DNA of 64,000 bases. Source: Haplodiscus bocki (taxonomy: Eukaryota). The notes under the pieces are model-generated. The model saw only the letters and a list, made by a program, of their open reading frames with translations. It had not been told where the DNA came from and made no database searches. This document shows, piece after piece, positions 2,936 to 64,000 of this stretch (the stretch's first letter is position 1; each line of letters opens with the position of its first letter). The stretch lies in the NCBI GenBank assembly GCA_965655095.1, contig OZ296651.1, positions 45,012,001 through 45,076,000 on the forward strand, written 5' to 3'. The translations under genes and the position numbers were made by a program.

Positions 2936-2944
2936 ACCCAAAAT

Positions 2945-5885: not shown

Positions 5886-5899
5886 AGATTAAAATCTCG

Positions 5900-7530: not shown

Positions 7531-7730
7531 NNNNNNNNNNNNNNNNNNNNNNNNNNNNNNNNNNNNNNNNNNNNNNNNNNNNNNNNNNNNNNNNNNNNNN
7601 NNNNNNNNNNNNNNNNNNNNNNNNNNNNNNNNNNNNNNNNNNNNNNNNNNNNNNNNNNNNNNNNNNNNNNNNNNNNNNNNNNNNNNNNNNNNNNNNNNNN
7701 NNNNNNNNNNNNNNNNNNNNNNNNNNNNNN
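7531..7730. other. Assembly/scaffold gap (200 N)
   Basis: Run of exactly 200 n; true size and contiguity unknown. Confidence 0.99.
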
Positions 7731-8900: not shown

Positions 8901-9319
8901 ATTCTTTGTTTGATGTGGGTGAACAGTGATAAAAGTTGCTATTTGAGCTTGTGCCTATTAGAGAACAAAGGTGAAGGTTCCTACTTGCTAACTAGTAATT
9001 AGTAGCGCAAAAATATTTGTCAAACAAGCAACCATAGCCTATTGAACCTAAGCCTCCATTACAAAACCAGCAGAACTGACGAAACATTCAACCATATGGA
9101 TAAATTTGAGGAAATACATGTTTATATCATTATAATCAAGGTTTGGGATAGATTTTTTGAATTAACAAGGAAATTTGTGTAAAGAAAAAGATCCAAAGGA
9201 ACAAATGATGGAAAAGTTGAATTTGCGGTGAAGATGAAAGCGTTAATTGCCGCGAAAATGATGGGAAAAACACAGTAGAATGGGGCTTAGTTGTCTGACA
9301 TTTTTATTCAGGCTACTTC

Positions 9320-12300
9320 GGAACATTACATGTGGTAATGCTTTCAGAAAATTTCAATTTTCAATTTCTCGCTCCTCCTGATCTTCAAGTTTCTTTTATT
9401 CCATCTACAACTCTATCGATAGCTTTGATTTTTTGGTGAAGAACTCAAATGAAAAACTGTTAGTGTTGTTCCCTCCATCACAATCCTGAAAGTTGGAAAA
9501 TTACAAAAAACGTCCATTTGTTGACCATTCTCGAAAATACAATTGATTTTTTTCCGTGATTTGAGACTTGCTGTCTCTCATCAAGGTCCTAATCGGAAGT
9601 TTTTTTTGCGGAGGAGGTTCCAAAAAAGAAGCTTAAACTCTGATCATTGCCTCAAAATCCTGAAGGTCCAAAAATTCCAAAAACTGTTGTTGATTTTGAT
9701 TTCACTCTGTTTTAAAATTTATTTCTTTTGTAATTATGGGCTGGATCTCTCCCTACAGAGTCTGAATCGACAACTTGTTTGTGAAATGGGCAATTGGATT
9801 GCAAAATGTCAATAATTTTCCCATGAACCATGAAATTGGCGGAAACAGTTTTTCACTCATTACCCAAAATCAGTTTCACTAGTAATCAGAGGCTTGATGT
9901 GATATTCCAAGATCCCTAGTTTTACATTTGAAGAGCATTCGATCTGGAAAGATCACTTTTTTACCTGTTCATCAATTGTCAGACAGACCCAAAATTTGAA
10001 AAATTACTATAATTTTGGAATGTTCAGATTTTCAAAACTCAACTATATCCGTGAATACAGGTTTGATTTCATCAATTAGTGTCTACTTTAAAAGATTTAC
10101 TTTCGAAGAGGAGCCTTTGATTGAAAAAACAAATGTCTAAAATAGCGTCAAACTTCTGATTTTCTCAATTTCCCGAAGGTGCTTTTGAAAAACAATCATC
10201 TCGACTTCGAAAATCTTCTCTTTTTCCTAACTACAGTCTTCATTTCTTCATTAGAGTGTCGAGCGACATTTTTACACTTGCAGAACAATCGCATTCAAAA
10301 ATAAATAAATTGACTTTTGCGACAGAACTTGCTCGTCCGAACGTTCTAGGTGCTGTAACTTTTGATTCAGTTCGTTTTCCAAAGTCTTTTTCTCTTAATT
10401 TCCTGTTTGACTATTTCGATCCATTTCTCCATCAAATGCTTTCATTTTTTGGTACACCCCTTCTCTCAAAAAATATCATTTCAATTCTTTCCATCAGACT
10501 CTAGACAGTACGAAGGGAAAAATTTTGTGTATAATCCTGATTTTCTTGGCAATGCAAATCGCTTTTCTTCTTTACTAGACACTTGATGTCTTTCATCAAG
10601 GCCCTAATCGGGAGTTTTTTTGTGGCGGACGCCTCTAATATTAATCCAATTTGTGATCATTGCGTCAAAGTTCCGATTGTCCAAACATTCCAAAAACTGC
10701 TATTCAATTTGACTTCTGTCCGTTTTCAGACCCATTTTCGTAGTAGGGGCTTGATTCTTTGCCTTAAAGTCTAAGTGGACAGCCTTTTCTCGGGTGAACA
10801 AATTGATTGCAATTTAACTCAATCATTTTCTTTGAATCACGACGCGACAGTAAGAAGTTTTCAAAAAGCTTTTTTTTGTTCTGATTTCGCCTCAAGTTTT
10901 GAAAATCAAACATGCCGGTAAATAGAGGCTTGATATGTTCTATCAATGTCTCGAACAACAACCTTACCGTTAATTAGCATTCGTTTTGGAAACTTTGTGT
11001 TTTGTTTTCTCTCTCAATTTCCTGACGGTCCCAATTTCCTAGCAAATGCTAACCTATTCGATTATTTTTGAATTGCAAACACTTTTTGTCCCGAGAATGC
11101 TGGTTTGGCTTCTCCAATTGAGGTCCTCATCGAAAGCATTTTCTTGAGAAAAAAGTTTTGATTAAAAATCGTTTCTCATCTCTGCGCCAAATTCCTGAAA
11201 TTCCGAGCGTCCAAAAAAAACCTCAAAAAAATGTCATCTCAGTTTTGAAACTCAATTTCATCCGTAACTCAGTTTTTTATCCTTTCATCAGGGTGTCAGG
11301 AGATAGATTTACACCAGGAGAAAACTCGACATGCAACACAATCATTTTCACCTTTGCATCCAATCCTGATGGTCCCAAAGCTCCAAGTGCTATAAATTTT
11401 TATTCATTTCGAATTTCAAACTGTGTCTTCGTCGTAACTGCAAGTTCTATTTCTTTCTTTAATTTCTCCGTCAAAAACATTCAGTTCTCGGAAAACCAAT
11501 TTTCGGGAAATTTGTCTTTTTTGTTTTTTTCATCAGAGTTAGAGTCTTGCAAGATTGATTGTTACTAAAAAGGTGTATATTGATGATTTTTGCTGATGAA
11601 ACAATTCATTTTACTCGGAAAGTACAGCCTTGACATCTTCCATCAAGGTGCGCATCGAATGGTTTTGTTTGTGGATGAGTGATCTAAAGAAGAATCCGTT
11701 CTGTGATCACTGCGATGAAACCTTGATGGTTCAAAAATTTCCGAAAACTGCAAAGAAGTTCAATTATTTCACTTCAAAATTTGTTTCTATTGGTAATTAC
11801 CAGCCTACTGGCTTCCTTTCTGCCAATAGATTGTCAACTGAGAAGTTTACACTTGCAGAAAAAACAATATCAAAAACAATTAGTTGGACATTTCCATCAG
11901 AATTCTGCTGGTCCCAACGTTCTCGGTGCTGTAAGATCTGATTCTTTACCTTTTCCAAACACTCTTCTTCGTAATTTCAGGATTGATTCCTCCCATCCAA
12001 TAGTCCATCAAAAGCTTTCGATTAATGCTAAACCTTTTCACTGACAAAATATCAATTCAATTCCTTCCATCAGAATCCAAAACGGTACGAAGTGGAGAAA
12101 CCATGTTTAAAAAGCTGTTTTTCCTTAATGAAAGAAATCATTTTACTCCGAAAAAAGAGACTTGATGTCTTCCAAGAACGTCCATTTCCAAATTCTCCTC
12201 TTTGTGGACGAAAATTGCAAAAAAAGGTTGAGTCTGCAATCACTGCGTTGAAACTGTGGTGGCTCAAGAATTTCGAAAATTGCAAATATTATTCAATGCG

Positions 12301-15110
12301 AATGCTTCATCTTGACTCCGAAAGTCTTTTTTATTCTCAATTATAGACCTATAGGCTTTACTCCCTTCATTAGGGTGTCAGTCGACAACTCCACATTTTC
12401 GAAATAAAAATAAAGCTCTCTGACTTTTGCTTTAGAAGCCTGCAGGTTCCTACGTTCCAGGTGCAATTGTTTAAGATTCCTTCTGTTCTTTGAACGCATT
12501 TTCCTTCGTAACTCTAGATTTGATTCGTTTTATCAATTTCTCAATCAAAAGCTTTCATTTTTTCCTAAACCACATAACTCGAAACTAAACAAATACATTC
12601 TTTCCATCAGAGTCCATATAGTACGAATGTTACGAACAAGGTTTACAAATTTGAGTTATCTCAATTTTACACCTAGTGTTTCTTTCCTAACTAGAAACTT
12701 GATGTCTTTCATCAACGTCCTACTGGAAAATCCTACTTTGTGCAGGAGAATTCTAGTAGAAATCTTCATTTTGATATTTGCGTCATTATCAAGAGGGTCC
12801 AGGTTTTCCAAAAATTGCTAATAAATTTCTAATTCTCTGCTTTGTCAAAGTTTCATCTTTTGTAACTGCATGCCGGATCTCTCCCGTCAGAATCTCAATC
12901 GATATCTTTTTAGGAGTAAAAAGTTCGATTCCAAATCTATCGACTATTATTCTGTGAATCTTGAAGTTGACGGTACGACAGCTCGGGATACTGTTTATAA
13001 TTCGAATTTGTATAACTAAAACCAACTTTTCTCATAACAAAAGGCTTGATGTGTTCCATCACGGTTTCAATCGACACGCAGAAAGTTGAAGAGCATTCAT
13101 TTTAAAAAAAATCATTTTTTACCCCTGTTTCAACATTTTTACGTTCCCAAAGTTCGAAAAGAAGCACCCACATTAGAAAAATATCGACTTCCGAACTAGC
13201 AGCTGATTTATATTTGAAGTGCCCTTGAACAAAATCATTTATATTGATCCCTCCGTCGAAGTTTTGACGCTCCCAAGGTTGGAGAAATGGCTTTTACTTT
13301 GCATCAAATTCTTTTTTGAGACTCAATTTCGTCGAAAATACCGGTTTTTTTCTTCAACTAAAGTGTTTATTGAAAGCAAATAATTGAAGGAAAGAGTTTG
13401 ACCTAAAATCAATTATTTTTCTCGATGTCCAAATGAATGTTTTCTTAGGTGTTCAGAAGGTACCCTCAATTTGGACTCATCTCGATTTCAAAACTTATTT
13501 CATTGCGCGACTACAGTTTTTATTTCATTCAAAACTGTGGCGGGCTACAGCTTTAAATTTTTTGAACATTCAAACGAAAAAGCAATCACCTTGATCTTAG
13601 CGTCAACATTGGGCTGTTCCCAATGTTCCAGGTGCCATTGCCATTGATTTCTCCCGACTTTGAATCTTTTTTTTTCTCCGTAATTTCTGATTTGATTCAT
13701 TCTAACAGTTTCTTAGAATCTCGATTTCGAAACTTTTTCAATCCGTGACTACTGGTTAGTTTTTTTCTACAAGTTGCATGGCGACAACTTAACACTTGTA
13801 CAAGACTCGATTTTCAAAAAAGGCATTCATTTTGATCATTGCATCTAAAACGTGCTGGTCCCAACGTTATAGTTGCTACTACTAAAGGTTCATCTCGTTT
13901 TTGGAACTACTTTTTCTCCGAAAATTAGAATTGGATTCCTTCCATCATTTTGTCAATCGAAATCTCTCAGTTTCTCCAAAACAACTTTCATGAAAAAAGG
14001 TATAAAACATCTATCAGAATACGAATATTACAAAATTTACAAATACTATTTTCAAGGTTGATTTTTCTCGATTTTGGAGTTTTTTCCGTAAATAATGGCG
14101 TGATGTCTTCCATCAAGGCCCTAATCGAAAATTAGTTTTCTGTAGAGAAGGATTTCAATAAAATTGTGTACTGTGATCATAGCTTCAAAATCGTAGGGGT
14201 CCAGATTTTCCAAAACACTGCTACGAATTTTGACTCTTCTGCATTTCCTTACTCGTGTCTTCCGTAGCTACAGTGTAGACCTCTCTGTTCAGTGCCTCCT
14301 TCGACAACTTTTTTGGGGGTAAACAATTCGATTTCAATTTTATCGTTTTCTGATTTATGAATCGCGAAGTTGACGGTGTGAGGGTTTCAGAAACTGATGT
14401 TTTTTTTATTTTGTCTCGAACACTCAAATCAAATTTCGCCATGACAAGGGGCTTGATGTGTTCTAACGAGGTCTCAATCGGCACTTCTATACTTAGAGCT
14501 CATTCGTTTTCAAAACAAAAGTTTTTATCCCTCCCTCAAATTTCTGATGGTCCCAACTTTTTGATAAAAGCAATTACCTTATATTAGTTTCGACTTCCAA
14601 ACCAAGTTTAGTCCGTATTTGCCGGTTCGATTCCTCCATTTAAGTTCCTGATAGGAAGCAAGACTTTGAGGGAGAAGGAATTGATCGAAGAAAAAGTTTT
14701 CATTTGCGACAAAATCTTGATAGACCCAAGTGTACAAAAAATGCCTCTAAAACGGATTCATCTCGATTCCTAAACTCATTTCAATCCGTGACTAACGGTT
14801 TGTTTCTTGATTTACAGTTTCAGGTGACAGCCTTACACTGAAGAAGACTCGATTTAAAATTCATTTGATCTGAACATCAAAATAGTGCTGAGCATGTAAA
14901 TTGAGCTAGTTCTAATGTTTCAATTGCTGATACTAATCATTCATCTCATTTTCTCAAAATCTCTCTTCTCCGGAGCTTCAAGTTTAATTTAATCCATCAA
15001 TTTTTCAGAAAACTGACATTTTTGTTTCTTTTTCAGAATAGTTTCAGTACGAAGGTTACAAAAATCGTTTTCAGTAGTGATTATTCTCGATAACCCCTAT
15101 GCTTTTCCTC
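9320..15110 (+). repeat. Family 1, old layer: diverged 6-mer (A-B-C-D-E-F, ~1.02-1.05 kb) with local rearrangements
   Basis: Type E heads (..agacttgatgtcttccatcaaggccctaatc) at ~9555, 10572, 11620, 12150, 12688, 14085, 15113; type A heads at ~9885, 10921, 13041, 14445. Copies alignable by type but strongly diverged. Confidence 0.8.
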
Positions 15111-17150
15111 TGTGTCTAGAGACTTGATGTCTCTTTTCAAGGCACTAATCGAAAGTTTTTCTCCACCGGAGGAACATCCCCTAAAAATCTGAAGCTGTGA
15201 TCGTTGTTTCAAAACTATGGTGATCCCAACATTCTAAAACTTTGTAAACTCTTCGACTTCTTCCTTTTTCAAACTCATCTTTTTCGTAGCTGAAGGCTAG
15301 ATCAATCAAATTGAAGTCTCCATCGACTGCATTTTTCAGATTAAATAATTCGATTGTAATGAAGTTGCTTAATTTTTCCGGAATCCTGATAATCACGGTA
15401 GGAAAACTCCAGAAACTGCCGCCTTTTTAATTCTTATCCCTAAGTGAAAAACCAATCTCCCAGAGAATAAAAGCTCGCCGTGTTCCATGAAGGTCTCAAC
15501 CCGCAGTTTAACACTTGAAGAGCATTCGTTTCAAAAAATTTTTCAACACGATGCCTCCATCAAGTTTCAGAAGAACCCAAGATTTGAGAAGTGGCTTTAC
15601 TTCAAAGAACTTTCTAATTTTCAACTCGTTTTTGTCCATGAAAACCCGTTTGGTTTCCTCATCTAAAGTCTTCAACGAAAGCAGTAACTTCGGAGGAAAA
15701 GTTTCGCTGAAAATCATTTTCCACTTATCGATAAATCAGAAAAATGATTTTTCCCGGGTGTTGAAGAAGGTGCCCTCAAACTAATCTCATCTCGATTCCA
15801 AAACTCAATTCAATGCGCGACTACAGGCTTTATTCCTTTCAATACAGTGGCAGGCGACAGCTTTACATTTTTTGAACAATCAAAGGAAGAGTCATTCACT
15901 TTGACCCTAGCATCAAGATTGGGCTGGTCCCAACGTTCTAAATGCCAGTACCTTTGAATCCTCCTGACGTTGAAGCTATTTTTTCTCGGTAATTTTTGAT
16001 TTGGATCATTCCAACATTTTCTCATTCGAAATCTTCCAATCTCCTCAACACCATTTTTACGGAATACTTTTTGTTCTTTACTTCCAACAGAATGCGGACA
16101 CTACGAAGCTTACGTAAATTGTTCATTTTGTTGGTTTTTCTTGATTAAAAAACAATGATTTCATCCGCGACTTTTTCTTTCAATGTCGTAATCGGCGTTT
16201 TGTTTCTGTGGAGAAGCACTCCATTGAAAAGTTTTTTTTGTAGTAATTGCGGCGAATTAAAGAGTTCACAATTTCCAGAAACTGCTAATAATTCGAAATT
16301 CTCTTTTTTCAAATTTTTTTTTCGTAGCTACGGGCTAGACTGCTCCCACAAGAGCCCAAATTGACATTTTTTTGGGGTGACGATTGGCTTTCGACTTTTA
16401 CGATTATTTTTCTATGAATCATTAAGTTGATGATATGAGAGTTTCACTAACTGCTTTCTTTTTCATTTTGTCTCAAAAAACAGATCAACTTTCCCCGTAA
16501 TGAGAGGTTTGATGTGTTCCCTCAAAATCTCAATCAACAATTGTACACTTGAAGAGCTTTCGTTTGTAAAACACATTAACTGTTCGATCCCTCTACTAAA
16601 ATTCTGAAGGTCCAAGGTTCGAGAACGGTGCCGGTTTGAATCTCCCGTTAAAAGTCTTCATCGGAAGCATAACATTAAGGGACGAGGGTGTGACCAAAAA
16701 ACTGTTCCTTCTTTTTTGGGCACAATGTGTGATTTTCCAGAGTGTCCTGAAGGTGCCCTTGAAAATGATTTATATCGATTTGAAAAATCTTCTAGATCCG
16801 TGACAACAGGTTCATTTCTTTCAAATTATTGTCTGGTGGCTCCATAACTTTAGTTGAACACTCGACACTGGAGTTACTCAGTTTCTTTTGCGGCAAAATC
16901 CTGCTAGTCTCAGCGTTCCAGGTGCTATTACTTAGGATTCTACTCAATTGTCGAAATTACTGTTCAGTGTATCCTCAGGTTTTATTTAGTCTATCAATTT
17001 CTCCATCGAAAGTGTTCATTTCCCGGAAGACTTTTTGATTGAAGAGATATCAATTTTTTCTTCCTCCAGAATCCTGCCAGTACGAACAATACAACAATGG
17101 CTTTTTGAAACTGAAAGCTTTTGATAACATTTTTTAATTCTCTCCAAAAC
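15111..17150 (+). repeat. Family 1: single intact 12-mer (two differentiated 6-mers, 2,034 bp)
   Basis: E1 (tagagacttg 15117), F, A, B, C, D, shortened E2 (~16165), F2, A1 (~16500), B1, C1, D1, next E1 (tagaagcttg 17151). Confidence 0.75.
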
Positions 17151-20100
17151 TAGAAGCTTGATCTCTAACTTCAAGGTCCTAATCGAAATTTTTTTCTGTC
17201 GAGCTTGAATCCAATGAAAAACGTGATTGTGATCGTTGCGTAAAAGTTATGATGATCCGAAATTTACAAAACAGGATTAAATAGTTGAATCTTTGCCTCT
17301 TTCAACTCACGTTTTCCGTGGCCACGGGCAGGACCTCTCACATGAGAGTCTCATTCGACAGTTCTTAATTCTGATTTTGCCTCAAAAATGAAAATCAACT
17401 GTTCCCGTAAAAAGAAGCTGGCTCTGTTCCATCAAGGTCTCAAACAGCAGTTTTACGGTTGAAGAGAATTTGATCCAAAAAATCATTTACATTGATCCCT
17501 CAGTGAATATTCCGACGGTCCCAGGGTTCGAGGAAAGTCTTTTACTTTCAATCAAAATCTTTTTTGAAACTCAATTTTGTCAAAAATGCCGGTTTGGTTT
17601 CTTCAACTAAAGTCTTTATCGAAAGTAATAAAATAGGAAAAGGGGTTTTTTGAGAATCCTTTTTTTTATGTCAAAGCCCCGATTCTCCCGTGTGGTCAGA
17701 AAAAGCCCTCAAATTTGAATCCTCTCGAATTCAAAAATCACTTCAATGTGCGACTACAGGCTTTAATTCTTTCAATACGGTGGCAGGCGACAGCTTTGTG
17801 ATTTTTAAACACCCAAAGAAAAAGTAATTCTTTCTGATCCTAAAATCAAAATCGTGCTGGTCACAATGATCCGAGTGTCAATGGCAATGATTCCTCCCGG
17901 CTTCGAAACTATCCTACCGTAATTTCTGGTTTGATTCGTTCCAACAACTTCTCAATGGGAATGTTCCAATCTACTCAAAACCAATTTTTTATTTTTTCTA
18001 TTGTCTATTACTTCCAACAGAATCCAAACACTACAGATGTTGCAAAACTTCTTGAAATCGTTAATTTTTGAATAAAACCAGACATTACAATGGTTACAAA
18101 ATTTGTTTACCTCGTTGATTTTCAAAAAAAACTCATTTTCTTACAATTTTTTCCGCCGGGTTCGTACTTAGAACTTTTAATATTTGTGGAGGAGCATTCC
18201 AATGAAACGTTTCAAAGTGAGTGTCCAGATTTTCCAAAAACGTCAAAAAGTTTTAACTTCCCTGCTTTTTCAAAAGCTTTTTTTCGCAGCTAAGAGCTAG
18301 GTCGGTCCCACAAAGTTCCAAATCGACAGTTTTTTGGGAAGGGACGATTGGGTTTCAACTTTTACCATTGCTTCTCTAGGAGCCATGAAGTTGAAAATAC
18401 GGGGGTTCCAGTAACTGCTTTCTTCCTGTTTTGTTTCGAAAACCACATGCAACTTTCGCCGTAATGACAAGTTTGATCTGTTCCTTCAAGTTCTCAACCG
18501 ACAGTTTTACACTTGAAGAGAATCCAATTTTAAAAAAATTGATTATTTTGAACCCTCTACTAAAACTTCGCAAGTCCGACGTTCGATAACAAGCTTTTCT
18601 TTCCCCAGAATCCTGACAGTACGAAGAATACAAAAAAACGCTTTTTGAAACTGATAATTCTTTATTTTATTTTTTACTTTTTTCCGTAACTAGATGTTTG
18701 GTGTCTACCGTCAAGGTCTTAATCTAGAGTTTTTTTTCCGTTGAGCAGGAATATTTTGAAAAACGTTATTGTGGTGGTTGCTTAAAAATTATGGTGATCC
18801 CAAAATTATGAAACGTGCTAAAATTTTCGAAGCTTTCCCTTTTTCGAACTCATGTTTTTCGTACCTACGGGCGGGATCTCTCACAGCAGAGTCTCATTCG
18901 ACAGATTTTCAGAGGAAAATTTTGAATTGCAAACTCTTTGCTTTTTTTTCTGAATCACGACACTCACAGTACGATTTTTCTAGAAAGTTCTCTTAACTCT
19001 GATTTGATTTTGGCTCAAAAAAAGAAATCAATTTTCCCTCAAAAAGAAGCTAGCTCCATTCCATCAAGGTTCCAAACAGCAGTTTTACGCTTGAGGAAGA
19101 CTTGATTGAAAAAATCGCTTACAATGATCCGTCAAGGATGTTTCCGACGGTTCCAAAACTCCATGAAGGGCTTTTACTTCGAGTCAAATTTTTTTGGAAA
19201 CTCATTTTGGTCAAAAATGCCAGTTTGGTTTCTTCAACTGAAGTCTTTATCAAGAGCATTGAATTGAAGGAAAGGGGTTCTTCGTGAATCCTATATCTTT
19301 TTTAATGTCAAAGTCCCGATTTTCCCGTACGTTCAGAAAGTGCCCTCAAACTTGAATCATCTCCTTTCCAAAATTCATTTCAATGCGCCACTACAGGCTC
19401 CATTCTTTTCAATATCGTGGCAGGCGACAGCGTTACGATTTTTGGGTCACTGAACAAAAAAGTCATTGATTTTGATCCTAAAATCAGAATCGTGCTGATC
19501 ACAATGATCCGAGTGCCATTACCAATCATTCCTACCTACTTCGAAATTATCTTTCCCTGTAATTCCTGGTTTGATTAATTCCAACAATTTCTCAATGGGA
19601 ACCTTTCAATCTATGCAAAACCAATTTTTTTAAAATTTTTCGAATGTCTATTACTTTCACCAGAATCCAGACACTACAAAAATGCAAAACTTGTTTAAAA
19701 TGTTGATTTTCGAAAAAAAACACATTTTCATGCAGTTTTTTCCGTCGAAGTTGTACTTAGTACTTTTAATATTTGTGGAGAAGCATTCCCATGAAACGTT
19801 TCAATGTGATATTTGCGTCAATATCAAGAGTGTCCTGATTTTTCAAAAACTTCAAAATCTTTCAACTTCCCTGCTTTTTCAAAAACTTTTTATCGTAGCT
19901 AAGGGCTGGGTCGATACCACAAAACTCCAAAACGACAGCAATTTGTGATTGAACGATTGGGTTTTCACCTGTACGAATCTTTTTCTACGAATCCTGAAGT
20001 TGACCAAACGAGGGTTCCAGTAAGTGCTTTTTTTGTTTGAGTTCAAAAACCAAAGTCAACTTTCCTCACAATGATAAATTTGATGTGTTCATTCAAGATC

Positions 20101-41200: not shown

Positions 41201-41700
41201 TAATCTTAAATCTTCAAAAAAGATCCAAAATTTTCGTAACCGGTAAGTCCAGAATTGAGTAAAAGGTTTCGTTTTTCATTGCGTTCAAACCAATGCTCCG
41301 CCGTAACCAGAAGATTGGTTTCCTCCATAAAAGCTTTGCTCTTGAATATTGAAGCTCCAAAGAGAAATTGGTCGGAAAAATTGCTTCTCCAGATCCATGC
41401 GTCAAACTCCTGATAGAGACGTTGTTCCAGGAACTGCAGTTATTTTTGAACCATCACGTCTCTCAAATCATGTTTTCGCGTTAACAGCGGGCTGGATTTT
41501 CTCCATCATTTTCATAATTGAATTTTCCATATAAGTACAATAAGTTCGAATTAGTGAATCCAATCACTTCTTCCTCCCATCAAAAATGTGAGAGACCCAA
41601 ACCTCTAGGAACTGCGATCTTTATTGATTCTTTTCGCTACTCAAGCTAGTGTGCCTCCGTAACTACCGGTCTGATTTCTAACATCATGCAATCAATTCCA
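38276..41700 (+). repeat. Family 2: 8-mer HOR (a-h, ~1,410-1,418 bp), ~2.4 units
   Basis: Type b heads at ~38472, 39890, 41300; ORFs 39939 and 41349 are near-identical and 1,410 bp apart; eight monomer heads per period. Confidence 0.9.
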
Positions 41701-53700: not shown

Positions 53701-56700
53701 TAACACCTGTAATGCAGGTTTCGATATAAAAATCTTTGTTCTGATTCTGTAACCAAATACTGAGGCCACGATTTCACGACAGTCCTATTTTCTTTGCTTC
53801 CTGTCGATACTCAAATTCTTTTTCCTTCTAATCTCAAAATTTTTTTTCCTAAGCATCTAAGAGCACAACCATCAGTTTAACAATAGGCTCCACTTCTGCC
53901 GTCAGGGTCTGAATAAAAAAACAACACCTGTAAGAGAAGTTTCGAATTAAAAATCTTCGTTCAGATTCATTCATCAAAGTTTTGAGGCCACGATTTCGCG
54001 ACTTTCCTAATTTTTTATGCTTCCTGTCGACACTCAAATTCTTTCTCTTTCATATCTAAAAGTCTTTTTTCTTTCATCCGAGTGCCAGCCCAACATTTCA
54101 CACTTGAAGAAATTTGTTCCTCTGATATTCAATTAACGTCACCTATGCCTCAAGTCATCGTAACCGAAAGTTACAGAAGTGGGTCCTTATTTTGGTTTTT
54201 CCTTGCGCTCAAACTAAAGGTCCTCCGTAATCAGAAGATTGAGTTGTTCCATCATGGTCTGAATACTGAATAATACACTTGCAGAAAGAAATTGGTTGCA
54301 AAAGATGTTGCTGATCCAGATCCTTGCCTCAAACCCCTGATCATCCGTTGTTCCAGGAAGTGATGTTTTTTAAACATCTTCAGTTTCCAATCATGTTTCC
54401 GCGTTATATGCAGGTTTCATTTTCCCCGTCAATTTCAAAAATGAGATATCAATATTTGTGGAAGAAGTTTCAAGTAGTGGAACCAATCCGTTCTGCCTGC
54501 CATCAAAATCTTGTGAGACCAAATATTCCAGGAAGTGCGAACTTAATTGCTTCTTTCACGACTCAATCTGTGGTGCCTCCGTATCTACAGCTCTGATTTC
54601 TAATATCAAGGAATCATTTGCAAGTAACACATCTGCAGATTGAAACTGACCCCAAAAAGACTAAAACCATGAGACTTGCTTCGAAATTTTGTCACACCGG
54701 TTGTTCCAGAATATGCTCTTGGTTCTGATTCATCTCAAATCTCTTGTTCCAAACTGTGTTGCCTCCCTAACTACAGGCAAGATTTCTTCCACTAAGCTCT
54801 CGCGAAACACTTTAACGGAATTAGAAAAACATAGAGTGAGAAATTAGTTTTTTTGATCCTTGAATCAAAATAATATTAATCCGATTGTTCTCAAATTTTC
54901 TCTTTTTACAGATTCACAACGACACGCATTTCATTCTCTTCCACTACTGCAGGTATGGTTTCGTCGCTGGCGGTCTCAATCAGAAGTTTTTTCTCGATGA
55001 CGAGAGCTTGATTGAGTAATTGTTTCTATTTGTTTCGAAAATGCTGAGAGTGAAAAAGTTCTGGAAGTTGCTACTAGTTTTGATTCGTTTAGGATTTGGA
55101 ACACAGTATTGTCGGCAGCAGCCGATGCCATTTTTTCCGTCAAGGCTTCATCGGAAAAAATCTACTTTGAGGCCAACAATTCGATGGAAAGAAAGCTAGC
55201 TTTTTTCTTTACGCCAAAATGCTGACGACATGAAAGTGCAAAATTTGAATCAAGTTTGTACTGTCTGGATCCTCAAACTCAACCATCACTGTAACTACAA
55301 GCTCGTTTTCTTCCATCAAGGACTCGATCAAAAATTTAACATTCGTATGGGTGGTTCCGATTTGAAGTTGTTCGCTGTGAATATTGGTTCAAAGTTTTGA
55401 GGCCAAAAGTTCCAAACAGTCCTATTTTTTCTCATGTCGATGCTCGAACGCATTTTCGTTCATATCAATCAGTTTGAGTTCTTTCATTTGAACTTCAACC
55501 TACCGTTTTACACTTTGAAAAGGTAGTTTGCTGAAAATAAATCAACTTCAAACTTGCCCTAAAGTCTCCGTAACCAAAATTGCACCTGTGGGTCTTTTTC
55601 TCGTTCTTTATTGCTTTGAAACCAATGTTCCTCTCTATTCAGAAGATTGAAATCTTCCATCAAGGTCAAATTCCTGAAAAATAGACGTGCAAAAAGAAGA
55701 AACTGGTTGCAAAAAGATGCTTTACAGATCTTTGCGTCAAGCTCCTATTACAACCGTTGTTCCAGGAACTGCTGTTGATTTTCACCAATTTTGACCTTCC
55801 AAATATGTTTTTCGTGTTATCCGCTAGTTTAGTTTTTTACATCACCTTCAAAATTGGCCTCTCCATATTTGTGGAAGACGTTTCAACTACTGGATCCAAT
55901 GGCTTCTTCCTTGCATCATAATCTTGAGAAACCAAAAACTCTAGGAATTGCGATCTTTATTGATTCTTTTCGCTACTCAGTTTAATCAGCCTCCTTAACC
56001 ACATGTTTGATTTCCAACATCAACAAATCCAATCCAAGTAGCAAACCTGAAGAATGAAGTTTATCCCAAAAAGTTTCAAATCGTGAAGCTAGTATCAAGT
56101 TTTTGTCGGACCGATTGTTCCAAAATATGTTATTGGTTTCGATTCAAATCAAATCTCTACATCCAAACCGTTGTGTCTCCCTATTTGCAGGTATGATTCC
56201 ATCCACGAAAGTTTTGAGAATCATTTTTACGGAATCAAAGCAAACGTGGGGTGAGAAATCAAAAACTTGATCCTTGCATCGAAATACTACTAATCAGACT
56301 GTTACAATTAGTACTATCTTTACAAATTCACGTCGATACACATAATAAACTCCTCCATGCCTACAATTTTGATTCAGTCTGTGGTGGTCTCAATAAAAAG
56401 CGTTAATCTCAAGGACGAGAACTTGATGGAACAGGTGTTTTTTATCTTGTTGTCAAAATGCACAGTGACAAAATTCTAGAAGAAGCTACTAAAATTGATT
56501 CATTTAAGTTTTGGAACACAATTTCATCGATAACAGCAGATGCCATTTTTTCCGTCAAGACATCGTCGGAAAAGTTCTACTTTGAGGCCAACAATTTGGT
56601 GGAAAGAAACTTAGTTTTTTTTCTTTGCGCCAAAATGCAGACTGTATGAATGTCCCAAACATGTTACAAGTTTGTATTATCTGCAACTACGATCACAACC

Positions 56701-58400
56701 ATCAGTGCAACAACAGGCTCAACTTCTGCTGTCAGGGTTTCAATCAAGAAATAACACCTGTAATGCAGGTTTCGATATAAAAATCTTTGTTCTGATTCTG
56801 TAACCAAATATTGAGGCCACGATTTCACGACAGTCCTATTTTCTTTGCTTCCTGTCGATACTCAAATTCTTTTTCCTTCTTATCTAAAAGATTTTTTTCT
56901 CTCAACTGGGTGCCAACCCAACATTTCACATTTGAAGAAGTTTGTTCCTCTGATATTCAATTAAGGTCACCTATGCCTCAAGTCATCGTAACCGAAAGTT
57001 ACAGAAGTGGGTCCTTATTTTGGTTTTTCCTTGCGCTCAAACTAAAGGTCCTCCGTAATCAGAAGATTGAGTTGTTCCATCATGGTCTGAATACTGAATA
57101 ATACACTTGCAGAAAGAAATTGGTTGCAAAAGATGTTGCTGATCCAGATCCTTGCCTCAAACCCCTGATCATCCGTTGTTCCAGGAAGTGATGTTTTTTA
57201 AACATCTTCAGTTTCCAATCATGTTTCCGCGTTATATGCAGGTTTCATTTTCCCCGTCAATTTCAAAAATGAGATATCAATATTTGTGGAAGAAGTTTCA
57301 AGTAGTGGAACCAATCCGTTCTGCCTGCCATCAAAATCTTGTGAGACCAAATATTCCAGGAAGTGCGAACTTAATTGCTTCTTTCACGACTCAATCTGTG
57401 GTGCCTCCGTATCTACAGCTCTGATTTCTAATATCAAGGAATCATTTGCAAGTAACACATCTGCAGATTGAAACTGACCCCAAAAAGACTAAAACCATGA
57501 GACTTGCTTCGAAATTTTGTCACACCGGTTGTTCCAGAATATGCTCTTGGTTCTGATTCATCTCAAATCTCTTGTTCCAAACTGTGTTGCCTCCCTAACT
57601 ACAGGCAAGATTTCTTCCACTAAGCTCTCGCGAAACACTTTAACGGAATTAGAAAAACATAGAGTGAGAAATTAGTTTTTTTGATCCTTGAATCAAAATA
57701 ATATTAATCCGATTGCTCTCAAAATTTCTCTTTTTAAAGATTCACAACGACACGCATTTCATTCTCTTCCACTACTGCAGGTACGGTTTCGTCGCTGGTG
57801 GTCTCAATCAGAAGTTTTTTCTCGATGACGAGAGCTTGATTGAGTAATTGTTTCTGTTTGTTTCGAAAATGCTGAGAGTGAAAAAGTTCTGGAAGTTGCT
57901 ACTAGTTTTGATTCGTTTAGGTTTTGGAACACAGTAATGTCGGCAGCAGCCGATGCCATTTTTTCCGTCAAGGCTTCATCGGAAAAAATCTACTTTGAGG
58001 CCAACAATTCAATGGAAAGAAAGCTAGCTTCTTTCTTTACGCCAAAATGCTGACGACATGAAAGTGCAAAATTTGAATCAAGTTTGTACTGTCTGGATCC
58101 TCAAACTCAACCATCACTGTAACTACAAGCTCGTTTTGTTCCATCAAGGACTCAATCAAAAACTTAATATTTGTAGGGGAGATTTCGATTTGAAAGTGTT
58201 CGCTGTGATTATTGGTTCAAAATTTTGAGGCCAAAAGTTCCAGACAGGTCTATTTTTTCTCATGTCGGTGCTCGAACGAATTTTCCTTCATATCAATCAG
58301 TTTGATTTCTTTCATTTGAATTTCAACCTACCGTTTTACACTTGGAAAAGGTAGTTTGCTGAAAATCAATCAACTTCAAACTTGCCCTAAAGTCTCCGTA
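41701..58400 (+). repeat. Family 2: 16-mer HOR (alternating 8-mer variants P and Q, ~2.82-2.83 kb) with structural variants
   Basis: b heads alternate P (aatcagaagattgagttgttccatc: ~42940, 45773, 47705, 51175, 54222, 57050) and Q (..agattgacatcttccatcaaggtcag: ~44351, 49760, 52582, 55631, 58458). Identical ORFs at 54324/57152 and 54458/57286 are 2,828 bp apart. Confidence 0.9.
45600..49300 (+). repeat. Family 2: 11-mer deletion variant (1,930 bp), two tandem copies
   Basis: Novel junction gtcatcggctcggaagttca at 46701 and 48631; ORFs 46622/48552 and 46740/48670 are 1,930 bp apart. Confidence 0.88.
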
Positions 58401-61400
58401 ACCTAAATTGCAGATGTGGGTCTTTCTCTCGTTCTTTATTGTTTTGAAACCAATGTTCCTCTCTGTTCGGAAGATTGACATCTTCCATCAAGGTCAGATT
58501 CCTGAAAAAAACGTGCAAAAAGAAACTGGTTGCAAAAAGATGCTTTACCAGATCATAGCGTCGAACTCCTGATACATCCGTTGTTCTACCAACTGCTGTT
58601 GTTTTTGACCAAACTCGATCTTCCAACTATGTTTTTTGTGTTATCGGCTTGTTTAGTTTTTTCTATCACCTTCAAAAATGGCCTTTCCATATTTCTGGAA
58701 GAAGTTTCAAATACTGGATCCAATAGCTTTTTCTTTGCATCATGATCTTCAGAAACAGAAATTCAAGGAATTGCGATCTTTATTGATTCCTTTTGCTCCT
58801 CCTTAACAACAGGAGGAGTTAATGAGCCTCCTTAACTACAGGTCTGATTTCCAACATCAAGAGGAATGCAATCCAAGTAACAAACCTGAAAAATGATGTT
58901 AATCCCAATAAATTTAAAATCGTGAGGCTAGTATCAAAACTTTGTCGGACCGATTGTTCCAAAGTACGATAAATGTTCTGATTCACATCGAATCTCTTCT
59001 TCCAAACCGTTTTCTCCCCCTATATGCAGGTATGATTCCTTCCACGAAGGTTTTGAGAATCATTTTTACGGAATCAAAGGAAACATAGTGTGAGAAATCA
59101 GTTAGTTTGATCCTTGCATCGAAATACCAGTAATCAGACTATTACAAAAAAACTTAGGGTCCTCCGTAATCAGAAGATTGAGTTGTTCCACCAGGGTCTG
59201 AATCTTGAATAATACACTTGAAAAAAGAAATTGGTTGCAAAAGAAGTTGCTGATCCAGATCCTTGCCTCAAACCCCTGATACATCCGTTGTTCCAGGAAG
59301 TGATGTTTTTTAAACATCTTGAGTTTCCAAGCTTGAGTTATATGCAGGTTTCATTTTCCCCGTCAATTGCAAAAATGGAATATCAATATTTGTGGAAGAA
59401 GTTTCAAGTAGTGGACCAATCCGTTCTGCCTGTCATCAAAATCTTGTGAGACCAAATATTCCAGGAAGTGCGAACTTAATTGCTTCTTTCACGACTCAAT
59501 CTGTGGTGCCTCCGTATCTACAGCTCTGATTTCGAATATCAAGGAATCGTTTCCAAGAAACACATCTTCAGATTGAAGTTTATCCCAAAAAGACTAAAAT
59601 CATGAGACTTGCTTCGAAATTTTGTCACACCGATTGTTCCAGAATATGCTCTTGGTTCTGATTCATCTCAAATCTCTTGTTCCAAACTATCTTGCCTCCC
59701 TAACTACAGGCAATATTTCTTCCACTAACCTCTCGCGAAACACTTTAACGGAATCAGAAAAACATAGAGTGAGAAATCACTTTTTTTGATCCTTGAATCA
59801 AAATAATATTAATCCGATTGTTCTCAAAATTTCTCTTTTTACAGATTCACAACGACACGCATTTCATTCTCTTCCACTACTGCAGGTACGGTTTCGTCGC
59901 TGGCGGTCTCAATCGGAAGTTTTTTGCTCGATGACGAGAGCTTGATTGAGTAATTGTTTCTGTTTGTTGTGAAAATGCTGAGAGTGAAAGTTCTGGTAGT
60001 TGTTACTAGTTTTGATTCGTTTAAATTTTGGAACACAATTTTGTCGGCAGCAGCCGATGCCATTTTTTCCGTCAAGACGTCATCGGAAAAACCTACTTTC
60101 AGGCCAACATTTCGATGGAAATAAAGCTGGCTTTTTTCTTTGCGCCAAAATGCTGACGACATGAATGTGCAAAAATTGAAACAAGTTTAAACTGTGTGGA
60201 TCTTCAAACTCAACCATCACTGTAACTACAAGCTCGTCTTCTTCCATCAAGGACTCAATCAAAAACCTAACAATTGTAGGGGATATTTCGATTTGAAAGT
60301 GTTCGCTGTGATTATTGGTTCAAAACTTTGAGGCCAAAAGTTCCAGACAGGTCTATTTTTTCTCATGTCGGTGCTCGAACGAATTTTCCTTCATATCAAT
60401 CAGTTTGATTTCTATCATTTGAATTTCAACCTAACGTTTTACACTTGGAAAAGGTAGTTTGCTGAAAATCAATCAACTTCAAACTTGCCCTGAAGTCTCC
60501 GTAACCTAAATTGCAGATGTGGGTCTTTCTCTCGTTCTTTATTGTTTTGAAACCATTGTTCCTCTCTGTTCGGAAGATTGACATCTTCCATCAAGGTCAG
60601 ATTCCTGAAAAAAAACGTGCAAAAAGAAACTGGTTGCAAAAAGATGCTTTACCAGATCATAGCGTCGAACTCCTGATACATCCGTTGTTCTACCAACTGC
60701 TGTTGTTTTTGACCAAACTCGATCTTCCAACTATGTTTTTTGTGTTATCGGCTTGTTTAGTTTTTTCTATCACCTTCAAAAATGGCCTTTCCATATTTCT
60801 GGAAGAAGTTTCAAATACTGGATCCAATAGCTTTTTCTTTGCATCATGATCTTCAGAAACAGAAATTCAAGGAATTGCGATCTTTATTGATTCCTTTTGC
60901 TCCTCCTTAACAACAGGAGGAGTTAATGAGCCTCCTTAACTACAGGTCTGATTTCCAACATCAAGAGGATTGCAATCCAAGTAACAAACCTGAAAAATGA
61001 TGTTAATCCCAATAAATTTAAAATCGTGAGGCTAGTATCAAAACTTTGTCGGACCGATTGTTCCAAAGTACGATAAAAGTTCTGATTCACATCGAATCTC
61101 TTCTTCCAAACCGTTTTCTCCCCCTATATGCAGGTATGATTCCTTCCACGAAGGTTTTGAGAATCATTTTTACGGAATCAAAGGAAACATAGTGTGAGAA
61201 ATCAGTTAGTTTGATCCTTGCATCGAAATACCAGTAATCAGACTATTACAAAAAAACTTAAGGTCCTCCGTAATCGGAAGATTGAGTTGTTCCACCAAGG
61301 TCTGAATCTTGAATAATACACTTGAAAAAAGAAATTGGTTGCAAAAGAAGTTGCTGATCCAGATCCTTGCCTCAAACCCCTGATACATCCGTTGTTCCAG

Positions 61401-64000
61401 GAAGTGATGTTTTTTAAACATCTTGAGTTTCCAAGCTTGAGTTATATGCAGGTTTCATTTTCCCCGTCAATTGCAAAAATGGAATATCAATATTTGTGGA
61501 AGAAGTTTCAAGTAGTGGACCAATCCGTTCTGCCTGCCATCAAAATCTTGTGAGACCAAATATTCCAGGAAGTGCGAACTTAATTGCTTCTTTCACGACT
61601 CAATCTGTGGTGCCTCCGTATCTACAGCTCTGATTTCTAATATCAAGGAATCGTTTCCAAGAAACACATCTTCAGATTGAAATTTATCCCAAAAAGACTA
61701 AAATCATGAGACTTGCTTCGAAATTTTGTCACACCGATTGTTCCAGAATATGCTCTTGGTTCTGATTCATCTCAAATCTCTTGTTCCAAACTATGTTGCC
61801 TCCCTAACTACAGGCAAGATTTCTTCCACTAAGCTCTCGCGAAACACTTTAATGGAATCAGAAAAACATAGAGTGAGAAATCAGTTTTTTTGATCCTTGA
61901 ATCAAAATAATATTAATCCGATTGTTCTCAAAATTTCTCTTTTTACAGATTCACAACGACACGCATTTCATTCTCTTCCACTACTGCAGGTACGGTTTCG
62001 TCGCTGGCGGTCTCAATCAGAAGTTTTTTGCTCGATGACGAGAGCTTGATTGAGTAATTGTTTCTGTTTGTTGTGAAAATGCTGAGACTGAAAGGTTCAG
62101 GAAGTTGTTACTAGTTTTGATTCGTTTAAATTTTGCAACACAATTTTGTCGGCAGCAGCCGATGCCATTTTTTCCGTCAAGACGTCATCGGAAAAATCTA
62201 CTTTCAGGCCAACAATTCGATGGAAAGAAAGCTAGCTTCTTTCTTTACGCCAAAATGCTGACGACATGAAAGTGCAAAATTTGAATCAAGTTTGTACTGT
62301 CTGGATCCTCAAACTCAACCATCACTGTAACTACAAGCTCGTTTTGTTCCATCAAGGACTCAATCAAAAACTTAATATTTGTAGGGGAGATTTCGATTTG
62401 AAAGTGTTCGCTGTGATTATTGGTTCAAAATTTTGAGGCCAAAAGTTCCAGACAGGTCTATTTTTTCTCATGTCGGTGCTCGAACGAATTTTCCTTCATA
62501 TCAATCAGTTTGATTTCTTTCATTTGAATTTCAACCTACCGTTTTACACTTGGAAAAGGTAGTTTGCTGAAAATCAATCAACTTCAAACTTGCCCTAAAG
62601 TCTCCGTAACCTAAATTGCAGATGTGGGTCTTTCTCTCGTTCTTTATTGTTTTGAAACCATTGTTCCTCTCTGTTCGGAAGATTGACATCTTCCATCAAG
62701 GTCAGATTCCTGAAAAAAAACGTGCAAAAAGAAACTGGTTGCAAAAAGATGCTTTACCAGATCATAGCGTCGAACTCCTGATACATCCGTTGTTCTACCA
62801 ACTGCTGTTGTTTTTGACCAAACTCGATCTTCCAACTATGTTTTTTGTGTTATCGGCTTGTTTAGTTTTTTCTATCACCTTCAAAAATGGCCTTTCCATA
62901 TTTCTGGAAGAAGTTTCAAATACTGGATCCAATAGCTTTTTCTTTGCATCATGATCTTCAGAAACAGAAATTCAAGGAATTGCGATCTTTATTGATTCCT
63001 TTTGCTCCTCCTTAACAACAGGAGGAGTTAATGAGCCTCCTTAACTACAGGTCTGATTTCCAACATCAAGAGGATTGCAATCCAAGTAACAAACCTGAAA
63101 AATGATGTTAATCCCAATAAATTTAAAATCGTGAGGCTAGTATCAAAACTTTGTCGGACCGATTGTTCCAAAGTACGATAAAAGTTCTGATTCACATCGA
63201 ATCTCTTCTTCCAAACCGTTTTCTCCCCCTATATGCAGGTATGATTCCTTCCACGAAGGTTTTGAGAATCATTTTTACGGAATCAAAGGAAACATAGTGT
63301 GAGAAATCAGTTAGTTTGATCCTTGCATCGAAATACCAGTAATCAGACTATTACAAAAAAACTTAAGGTCCTCCGTAATCGGAAGATTGAGTTGTTCCAC
63401 CAAGGTCTGAATCTTGAATAATACACTTGAAAAAAGAAATTGGTTGCAAAAGAAGTTGCTGATCCAGATCCTTGCCTCAAACCCCTGATACATCCGTTGT
63501 TCCAGGAAGTGATGTTTTTTAAACATCTTGAGTTTCCAAGCTTGAGTTATATGCAGGTTTCATTTTCCCCGTCAATTGCAAAAATGGAATATCAATATTT
63601 GTGGAAGAAGTTTCAAGTAGTGGACCAATCCGTTCTGCCTGCCATCAAAATCTTGTGAGACCAAATATTCCAGGAAGTGCGAACTTAATTGCTTCTTTCA
63701 CGACTCAATCTGTGGTGCCTCCGTATCTACAGCTCTGATTTCTAATATCAAGGAATCGTTTCCAAGAAACACATCTTCAGATTGAAATTTATCCCAAAAA
63801 GACTAAAATCATGAGACTTGCTTCGAAATTTTGTCACACCGATTGTTCCAGAATATGCTCTTGGTTCTGATTCATCTCAAATCTCTTGTTCCAAACTATG
63901 TTGCCTCCCTAACTACAGGCAAGATTTCTTCCACTAAGCTCTCGCGAAACACTTTAATGGAATCAGAAAAACATAGAGTGAGAAATCAGTTTTTTTGATC
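58400..64000 (+). repeat. Family 2: 12-mer HOR (2,104-2,105 bp), ~2.7 near-identical units, continuing past the window
   Basis: Junction attacaaaaaaactta at 59141, 61245, 63350; ORF triplets 59102/61206/63311 and 59231/61335/63440, the last two of each identical in translation. Confidence 0.95.

What the first reader, a model, noticed from the sequence alone, without database searches (positions are those of the whole stretch)
9320..64000. Alpha-satellite-style system: nucleosome-length (~175 bp) monomer hidden under kilobase higher-order repeats; candidate (peri)centromere
Seen: what look like unrelated 1.0, 1.4, 1.6, 1.9, 2.0, 2.1 and 2.8 kb repeats are all multimers (6, 8, 9, 11, 12, 12, 16) of one ~175-bp monomer. 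Adjacent monomers are very divergent while HOR copies are near-identical, and orientation is constant for 55 kb. Established: this monomer size plus HOR architecture with a diverged, TE-invaded edge characterises primate alpha satellite, and ~178 bp is the Arabidopsis CEN178 size. The sequence does not resemble either as far as I can recognise. Inference: an independently evolved HOR centromeric or pericentromeric satellite in a non-vertebrate, possibly undescribed.
Basis: partly seen in the sequence, partly recalled or inferred. Interest (0 to 1): 0.88.

Follow-up and report, generated by a model that had tools for sequence, protein, structure and literature searches.

The report
Hidden 175-bp satellite with higher-order repeats
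This stretch of an animal chromosome is a real non-coding satellite of very diverged ~175-bp units re-copied in blocks of 8 to 17 units, much like human centromere DNA in layout, but nothing here shows that it acts as a centromere.

Summary
A monomer model built from the window finds 334 head-to-tail copies, all on the + strand and none in shuffled sequence. Their spacing is 174.8 ± 6.2 bp and they cover 92% of 9320-64000. Neighbouring monomers are only 44-49% identical. Copies 9 or 12 monomers apart are 91% and 98% identical. There are three tiers: 175 bp, a 1.41-kb 8-mer, and a 2.83-kb 16-mer made of two diverged 8-mers. From the 16-mer come 11-, 12- and 17-mer variants. A separate 1.60-kb 9-mer lineage fills 17-36.7 kb.

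The array starts earlier than reported, at 1382. One 6.4-kb insertion with LTR-like ends (2935-9332) splits a monomer almost in register.

It is not coding: ORF lengths match a composition-matched null, there is no period 3 and no Pfam match. It is not an RNA-gene array. It has no CENP-B box.

The best reading is an ordinary satellite family shaped by unequal exchange in monomer register, probably heterochromatic. A centromere role is plausible but untested, at about 0.25-0.3.

Unchecked notes from this scan report similar hidden 8-mer and 12-mer repeats of 173-177-bp monomers on other pieces of the same genome.

Verdict: new member of a known kind, of moderate interest.

The parts
1382..2934 (+).
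   Evidence: Twelve nhmmer hits on the + strand, E down to 6.8e-25. No HOR copy is detectable.
2935..9332 (.). Foreign 6.4-kb insertion, with the assembly gap 7531-7730 inside it. It has diverged LTR-like terminal direct repeats and is probably a decayed LTR-type element.
   Evidence: The monomer model stops at position 40 at base 2934 and resumes at position 51 at base 9333. 2940-3115 aligns to 9010-9182 with a Smith-Waterman score of 53, against 20.3 ± 2.3 (maximum 28) in 200 shuffles. None of the four insert ORFs scanned has a Pfam match.
9333..17049 (+). Old 'monomeric' layer of diverged monomers with faint 3-, 6- and 12-mer periodicity
   Evidence: Identity is 0.53 at lag 3, 0.57-0.58 at lag 6 and 0.58-0.59 at lag 12, against about 0.49 at other lags. 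The best copy of any 1-kb tile is absent or 65-74% identical.
17050..36730 (+). 9-mer HOR array with units of 1.60 kb, and 1.58 kb from about 32.5 kb onward. Monomer types run A G H I B C D E F/J, in about 12 copies, with an inner ancient trimer duplication (HIB resembles CDE).
   Evidence: Spacings are 1600-1612 and 1578-1581 bp. Identity at lag 9 is 0.91 and 0.87. Type map. B-E, C-H and D-I are 57-62% identical. Tiles are 95-99.7% identical to their best copy.
36731..38918 (+). Short stretch of diverged single-type monomers between the two HOR lineages
   Evidence: All monomers here are singletons in the type map. Best tile identity is 69-73%.
38919..41745 (+). Two copies of the ancestral-type 8-mer (L M N O P Q R S), unit 1.41 kb
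   Evidence: Type map. Spacings are 1411-1413 bp. Tile identity is 82-89%.
41927..56966 (+). 16-mer (2.83 kb), types T U V W X Y Z a | b U c d h e S f. It is two diverged copies of the 8-mer. Variants of 11, 9 and 17 monomers differ from it by whole monomers.
   Evidence: Each 8-mer type L-S matches its two counterparts at 57-76% while unrelated types sit at about 45%. Spacings are 2828-2834, 1931, 3047 and 1414 bp. Type string.
56967..64000 (+). 12-mer HOR (2105 bp), types X Y Z a b U c d h e S f, which is the 16-mer minus T U V W. It is the youngest block and runs off the end of the window.
   Evidence: Identity at lag 12 is 0.98, with older signal at lags 4 and 8 of 0.56-0.57. Tiles are 98-100% identical. 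Spacings are 2104-2105 bp.

Best explanation
The window holds at least 56 kb of a non-coding satellite DNA family, from 1382 to 64000. One 6.4-kb foreign insertion interrupts it. The basic unit is a ~175-bp monomer laid head to tail in a single orientation.

The monomers are old. They are about 65% identical to their consensus and 44-49% identical to each other. Blocks of several monomers have later been re-amplified as units. One lineage is a 1.60-kb 9-mer. The other is a 1.41-kb 8-mer that doubled and diverged into a 2.83-kb 16-mer. That 16-mer then gave 11-, 12- and 17-mer variants by gain or loss of whole monomers.

Shown here: the period, the single orientation, the monomer-type strings, the three tiers, the age layers, and the absence of coding or RNA-gene signal.

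Inferred: the units arose and stay homogeneous through unequal crossing-over and gene conversion between monomers misaligned in register. The array is packed as constitutive heterochromatin with about one nucleosome per monomer. It lies in or beside a centromere. Whether it binds the centromeric histone is open.
For: Monomer family: 334 hits, all on the + strand, none in shuffles, spacing 174.8 ± 6.2 bp, 92% coverage. Autocorrelation peaks at about 175 bp with harmonics, and at the unit lengths.

HOR blocks and nested tiers. Age layering, with no insertion anywhere in 9.3-64 kb.

Non-coding:
- Stop-free run lengths match a Markov-2 null.
- Monomer lengths show no mod-3 bias.
- Column conservation has no period 3 (p = 0.10), and amino-acid conservation is equal in all six frames.
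- Dinucleotide spectra show no period-3 power.
- Pfam finds nothing above its cut-offs.
- An exhaustive search of 1.84 billion proteins gave only one chance hit, to a repetitive protein on a metagenome contig whose neighbouring genes are bacterial.

Not an RNA-gene array: Rfam at gathering and at permissive thresholds, and ARAGORN, find nothing.

Not an assembly artefact. A contig in an ENA assembly (ERZ26859043), whose name follows the metaMDBG style, is 100% identical over window 12351-36489. By the record's coordinates it extends to 44209. It is probably built from the same reads. Contigs from two samples hold pieces of the 12-mer at 99-100% identity.
Against: Nothing contradicts the satellite and HOR reading. 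The functional parts are unsupported by data. No run on record as RNA holds the sequence. No chromatin or cytological data exist here. There is no ~10-bp WW periodicity that would suggest rotational nucleosome positioning. There is no strong dyad symmetry and no conserved box common to all monomers. Blocks are small, 3-20 kb, and of mixed age, unlike a single large homogeneous centromere core. The 12-mer block does run off the window, and the ENA contig continues about 132 kb further with unknown content.
Confidence: 0.85

Rival explanations
1. The array, or the homogeneous 12-mer block running off the window, is the functional centromere core. The ~175-bp monomers carry CenH3 nucleosomes and chromosome-specific HORs mark the kinetochore site, as in primate alpha satellite.
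For: The layout matches: a nucleosome-length monomer, a single orientation, HOR blocks, and a diverged edge carrying an insertion while 9.3-64 kb has none. Identity rises to 98-100% at the right end. By the offsets given in this scan's notes, the window lies at least 41 Mb from one end of its piece and at least 56 Mb from the other. Unchecked notes report 8-mer and 12-mer HORs of 173-177-bp monomers on other pieces.
Against: There is no direct evidence. No CENP-B box is present and no box is shared by all monomers. Blocks in the window are small and of mixed age. Notes place other 'centromere-like' satellite loci 13.9 Mb before and 17.1 Mb after this window on the same piece. The genome holds very many satellite families.
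Confidence: 0.27
2. The monomer is a decayed protein-coding repeat, either a ~58-residue domain or an exon-plus-intron unit of a giant repetitive gene on the minus strand. The consensus reads as a 52-codon open frame there.
For: The minus-strand consensus has one frame open for 52 codons, and similar peptide-like strings recur in several minus-strand ORFs.
Against: The antisense frame is equally open. ORF lengths equal a Markov-2 null. Monomer lengths are 103, 104 and 72 across the mod-3 classes. Unit lengths are not multiples of 3. There is no period 3 in conservation (p = 0.10), and amino-acid identity is 0.19-0.21 in all six frames. Pfam finds nothing above its cut-offs. No true homologue appears among 1.84 billion proteins.
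Confidence: 0.02
3. The satellite is an amplified small-RNA gene or pseudogene, such as tRNA, snoRNA, 5S or SL RNA. Notes of this scan report such arrays elsewhere in this genome.
For: Precedent within the genome, from unchecked notes: U14 and tRNA-Ile arrays. The monomer length is compatible with a small gene plus spacer.
Against: There is no Rfam match at gathering thresholds over the whole window, nor at E up to 0.1 over two HOR stretches. ARAGORN finds no tRNA. The 44-49% identity between monomers is incompatible with conserved RNA genes.
Confidence: 0.03
4. The monomer originated from an internal tandem repeat or end of a mobile element, for example a Helitron or MITE. The arrays are transposon-seeded satellites. 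This concerns origin only and is compatible with the best explanation.
For: This is a common origin of ~170-bp invertebrate satellites (general knowledge). Notes report abundant Helitron-like elements and transposon-derived satellites in this genome.
Against: No transposon sequence flanks or adjoins monomers in the window. The only insertion is unrelated to the monomer. No repeat library is available to test it.
Confidence: 0.1

Closest known systems
Primate alpha satellite (171-bp monomer, chromosome-specific higher-order repeats)
   Same: Nucleosome-length monomers lie head to tail in one orientation. Diverged neighbouring monomers sit inside near-identical multi-monomer units. Unit variants differ by whole monomers. 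A younger homogeneous block lies beside older diverged 'monomeric' layers that carry an insertion. Units are nested, with a 16-mer made of two 8-mers.
   Different: Monomers here are much more diverged, at 44-49% pairwise identity against roughly 60-80% in alpha satellite (from my own knowledge). No CENP-B box is present. Blocks in the window are kilobases to tens of kilobases, not megabases. Sequence relatedness could not be tested. Centromere function is unknown.
Regular higher-order repeats in the beetle Tribolium castaneum (Vlahovic et al., PMC5737470)
   Same: It is an invertebrate. [quoted passage not shown] Monomers differ from alpha satellite. Many of the arrays are not tied to a demonstrated centromere function.
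   Different: That paper reports 4- to 6-mers with 'substantial riddling'. Here the units are 8- to 17-mers in a three-tier hierarchy over more than 55 kb, with no interruption in 9.3-64 kb.
Arabidopsis CEN178/CEN180 centromeric satellite
   Same: The monomer is ~178 bp, arrays keep one orientation, and higher-order repeats are present (from my own knowledge).
   Different: CEN178 monomers are highly similar to each other, and its HORs are defined by a few variant sites. Here the monomers are barely alignable. CenH3 binding is demonstrated there and not here.

Membership tests
Satellite DNA with regular higher-order repeat (HOR) organisation | Head-to-tail monomers of constant length in one orientation | tested here: met
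   334 of 334 model hits are on the + strand. Spacing is 174.8 ± 6.2 bp. No hit reaches E<0.01 in shuffles.
Satellite DNA with regular higher-order repeat (HOR) organisation | Neighbouring monomers diverged; monomers n positions apart near-identical | tested here: met
   Identity at lag 1 is 0.44-0.49. It is 0.91 at lag 9 and 0.98 at lag 12.
Satellite DNA with regular higher-order repeat (HOR) organisation | Unit variants differ by whole numbers of monomers | tested here: met
   Type strings for the 8-, 9-, 11-, 12-, 16- and 17-mers. Unit lengths divided by n give 175-179 bp.
Satellite DNA with regular higher-order repeat (HOR) organisation | Non-coding | tested here: met
Primate alpha satellite (sequence family) | Monomer homologous to the 171-bp alpha consensus | not testable with these tools
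   No alpha reference and no Dfam or Repbase library is available.
Primate alpha satellite (sequence family) | CENP-B box (TTCGNNNNANNCGGG core) in a subset of monomers | tested here: not met
   No exact match. The 16 one-mismatch hits are mostly one HOR position counted repeatedly.
Functional centromeric satellite | Occupied by CenH3/CENP-A nucleosomes | not testable with these tools
   This needs ChIP-seq or CUT&Tag. No such data are reachable.
Functional centromeric satellite | Family present at the primary constriction of most or all chromosomes | not tested
   Only unchecked notes of this scan point to similar arrays on other pieces. Other parts of the genome cannot be read from here.
Protein-coding tandem repeat or exon array | A preserved reading frame, period-3 conservation, protein homologues | tested here: not met
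Small-RNA gene array (tRNA, snoRNA, 5S, SL RNA) | Match to an RNA covariance model | tested here: not met
LTR retrotransposon (for the 2935-9332 insertion only) | Terminal direct repeats | tested here: met
   2940-3115 against 9010-9182 scores 53, with a null of 20.3 ± 2.3. Identity is about 62%, so the element is old.
LTR retrotransposon (for the 2935-9332 insertion only) | gag/pol coding capacity and target-site duplication | tested here: not met
   None of the four insert ORFs scanned has a Pfam match. No ORF reaches 120 aa. No duplication is recognisable by eye. An assembly gap lies inside the insertion.

The most novel reading that the evidence does not exclude
This ~175-bp family is the CenH3-bound centromeric satellite of an unidentified animal for which this scan's notes hint at spliced-leader trans-splicing. 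It would carry chromosome-specific 8-, 9-, 12- and 16-mer higher-order repeats. That would be an independent, convergent origin of the full alpha-satellite-type centromere architecture, built on monomers so diverged that standard repeat finders miss the period.
Probability: 0.25. Interest if true: 0.65.

Novelty: new member of a known kind. Interest (0 to 1): 0.4.

Why it matters
It is a clean, fully resolved example outside vertebrates of nested higher-order repeat evolution: 175 bp, then 1.41 kb, then 2.83 kb, with later whole-monomer deletions. The layers of different age lie side by side, which is useful for modelling how satellites are born and homogenised.

If CenH3 mapping showed that it is the centromere, it would add an independent case of alpha-satellite-like centromere design. 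It would give probes for karyotyping this animal.

It is also a practical warning. The period is invisible to TRF at default scoring. Public protein collections hold pseudo-proteins called on this satellite with TGA read as tryptophan.

Tried and rejected
- **TRF:** it found only one 127-bp duplication, so the period had to be shown by autocorrelation and a profile model.
- **Coding hypothesis:** tested six ways and rejected. The 204-aa + strand ORFs are a composition effect.
- **RNA-gene hypothesis:** rejected.
- **Half-monomer sub-repeat (TTTGAT..CATCAA seen twice per monomer):** not significant, since 28 of 200 column shuffles score as high. AT-rich dinucleotides do show their strongest power near 88 bp.
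- **Dyad symmetry, hairpins and CENP-B box:** nothing notable.
- **Nucleosome-type 10-bp periodicity:** absent.
- **Organism identity:** not obtained. Run names are coded, and the ENA accession and monomer motifs appear in no paper.
- **Relatives elsewhere:**
  - Word-based protein search with a 9-mer ORF found only three pseudo-proteins of this same contig.
  - A 12-mer ORF found none.
  - The exhaustive search found one spurious hit on a bacterial-type contig.
- The findings index by sequence and by relatives was blank.
- **Walking along the 187.7-kb ENA contig past the window end:** this failed. The collection's genes there were called with TGA as tryptophan, so they cannot be given by reference. 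Exact look-ups of four stop-free ORFs found nothing or stayed inside the window, and the genes called near that locus's right end all contain stops. I did not read through stops. I did not touch the N gap.
- **Read laying:** only contigs were available, so there is no copy number, strand or expression information.
Full report

Yes.

Autocorrelation of 9320-64000 shows a broad peak at lags 171-178 (0.281-0.291, against a median of 0.270 and sd 0.0034). Harmonics lie near 347-353 and 520-522. Sharp peaks lie at 1601, 2105, 2828, 1414 and 1931. The ~175-bp peak is among the highest in every 3-kb tile from 9 kb to 64 kb and is absent from 1-9 kb.

TRF at default scoring finds only one 127-bp duplication. 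The period really is hidden.

I built a profile of the monomer by iterating nhmmer from a single 176-bp seed, then rebuilt it at full length, 178 positions.
- It finds 334 copies at E<0.01, every one on the + strand.
- Three second-order Markov shuffles of the same sequence give no hit at E<0.01.
- 298 of 327 successive spacings lie in 150-200 bp, with mean 174.8 and sd 6.2.
- The hits cover 50,098 of the 54,681 bases of the finding, and no uncovered stretch there exceeds 96 bp.

**2. Anatomy**

Monomers are old. At less than 70% identity there are 76-82 distinct types. They are on average 64.6% identical to the consensus. Neighbours are 44-49% identical on model columns, against about 27% expected from composition.

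Clustering monomers at 80% identity gives a type string along the array:
- **17.05-36.7 kb:** about twelve copies of a 9-mer, A G H I B C D E F/J. Units are 1.60 kb, and 1.58 kb from about 32.5 kb onward. Identity at lag 9 is 91% and 87%. An ancient inner trimer duplication is visible: H-C, I-D and B-E are 57-62% identical.
- **38.9-41.7 kb:** two copies of an 8-mer, L M N O P Q R S, unit 1.41 kb.
- **41.9-57 kb:** a 16-mer of 2.83 kb, T U V W X Y Z a | b U c d h e S f. Its two halves are each a diverged copy of that 8-mer. Every type L to S matches its two counterparts at 57-76%, while unrelated types sit near 45%. Variants of 11, 9 and 17 monomers differ from it by whole monomers.
- **57-64 kb:** a 12-mer of 2105 bp, which is the 16-mer minus T U V W. 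It is 98-100% identical between copies and runs off the window.
- **9.3-17 kb:** only faint 3-, 6- and 12-mer signals at 53-59% remain.

The 9-mer types are unrelated (57% or less) to the 8-mer types, so two HOR lineages lie side by side.

Per 1-kb tile, identity to the best other copy is as follows:

| Window region | Identity to best other copy |
|---|---|
| up to 12 kb | none detectable |
| 12-18 kb | 65-81% |
| 19-36 kb | 95-99.7% (one tile, 31-32 kb, at 86%) |
| 37-38 kb | 69-73% |
| 39-56 kb | 82-98% |
| 57-64 kb | 98-100% |

**3. Surroundings**

Between 2935 and 9332 lies a 6.4-kb foreign segment that includes the assembly gap 7531-7730. I left the gap alone.
- The monomer model stops at position 40 on its left and resumes at position 51 on its right. 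This looks like one insertion into one monomer.
- Its ends are diverged direct repeats. 2940-3115 against 9010-9182 scores 53, with a null of 20.3 ± 2.3.
- TG...CA termini are plausible by eye.
- None of the four insert ORFs scanned matches Pfam.

I read it as an old, decayed LTR-type element.

Bases 1-1381 match neither the satellite nor anything I could name. No other insertion interrupts 9.3-64 kb.

**4. What it is not**

It is not coding:
- Stop-free run lengths on both strands match a second-order Markov null. The 200-aa + strand ORFs are a composition effect.
- Monomer lengths fall 103, 104 and 72 into the three mod-3 classes.
- Unit lengths are not multiples of three.
- Column conservation has no period 3 (p = 0.10). 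Amino-acid identity among monomers is 0.19-0.21 in all six frames.
- Dinucleotide spectra have no period-3 power.
- Pfam finds nothing above its cut-offs.
- An exhaustive search of 1.84 billion representative proteins with a 121-aa ORF gave one hit at E = 3.5e-4. It is a repetitive protein on a metagenome contig whose neighbouring genes are bacterial, a chance match.
- The minus-strand consensus does read open for 52 codons, which first made me suspect a protein repeat. Its antisense frame is equally open.

It is not an RNA-gene array. Rfam finds nothing at gathering thresholds over the whole window, nor at E up to 0.1 over two HOR stretches. ARAGORN finds no tRNA.

It has no CENP-B box and no box shared by all monomers. 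It has no notable dyad symmetry and no 10-bp WW periodicity. A tempting half-monomer sub-repeat is not significant.

CpG is not depleted, with observed over expected at 0.89.

**5. Is it an assembly artefact?**

Unlikely.

An ENA assembly (ERZ26859043) holds a contig, ctg86003_43.81x_l, of 187,711 bp, named in the metaMDBG style. It is 100% identical over window 12351-36489, and by the record's coordinates it extends to 44209. It probably derives from the same reads, so it is a second assembler rather than a second sample.

Contigs of runs from two samples of one study hold pieces of the 12-mer at 99-100% identity. They also hold many 90-95% relatives.

By the coordinate mapping, that contig continues about 132 kb beyond the window end. 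I could not read that part (see the Tried and rejected section).

**6. How it most likely works**

The pattern is the classical product of unequal crossing-over and gene conversion between monomers misaligned in register:
- whole-monomer gains and losses;
- units nested inside units;
- local homogeneity against old divergence;
- a single orientation.

The pattern is shown. The mechanism is inferred from established satellite biology.

A 175-bp period equals a nucleosome plus linker. This makes one nucleosome per monomer plausible, but only the length supports it. I commit to 'ordinary heterochromatic satellite family, possibly pericentromeric' at about 0.85 for the structural statement. I put a true CenH3-bound centromere role at about 0.25-0.3.

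For a centromere role:
- the alpha-like layout;
- the insertion-free interior;
- identity rising toward the right end;
- a position deep inside a piece of at least 98 Mb (offsets);
- unchecked notes of similar 8-mer and 12-mer HORs of 173-177-bp monomers on other pieces.

Against it:
- small blocks of mixed age;
- no binding box;
- other 'centromere-like' satellite loci noted 13.9 Mb before and 17.1 Mb after this window on the same piece;
- a genome crowded with satellite families.

**7. Comparison and novelty**

In layout this is closest to primate alpha satellite. Among invertebrates it is closest to the regular HORs reported in Tribolium castaneum (PMC5737470). That paper states that such regular HORs had not been seen in insects before it and are riddled with interruptions.

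This array is longer, cleaner and more deeply nested, and its monomers are far more diverged. Membership in the alpha or CEN178 sequence families could not be tested, because no reference library is available.

The kind of thing is known. I class it as a new member of a known kind, of moderate interest. Interest would rise if CenH3 mapping placed the centromere here.

Noticed in passing
window 1382-2934: The same ~175-bp satellite continues left of the finding's stated start, with twelve diverged monomers on the + strand. The array therefore spans at least 1382-64000.
   Followed up: yes
window 2935-9332: A 6.4-kb insertion splits one monomer almost in register. It has ~62% identical LTR-like terminal direct repeats (2940-3115 and 9010-9182) and no recognisable coding capacity. 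The assembly gap lies inside it, so its true length is unknown.
   Followed up: partly
window 1-1381: Non-satellite sequence at the left end of the window. It has no monomer hits and no Pfam match in its 110-aa ORF. Whether it is the array's true edge or another insertion is unknown.
   Followed up: partly
window 49177-49432: A local two-copy 127-bp tandem duplication (75% matches) inside the HOR region. It is the only repeat TRF reports in the whole window.
   Followed up: no
window 20129-20205 and the same position in each 9-mer unit (for example 21747-21811 and 23347-23411): Each 1.60-kb unit has one over-long monomer of about 219 bp, with about 65 bp that the monomer model does not cover. 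The 1.58-kb variant has a 45-bp fragment instead.
   Followed up: no
L001-L003 (ENA ERZ26859043 contig ctg86003, equal to window 12351-44209): The public protein collection holds pseudo-proteins (P0001-P0003) called on this satellite with TGA read as tryptophan. They are artefacts of gene calling on eukaryotic satellite DNA inside a metagenome-style assembly.
   Followed up: yes
window 9333-64000: AT-rich dinucleotides have their strongest spectral power near 88 bp, half a monomer. Each monomer therefore has two AT-rich patches, although a sequence-level half-monomer repeat is not significant.
   Followed up: partly
window 9333-64000: CpG observed over expected is 0.89, so there is no CpG depletion. 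This suggests little germline cytosine methylation at this locus.
   Followed up: no
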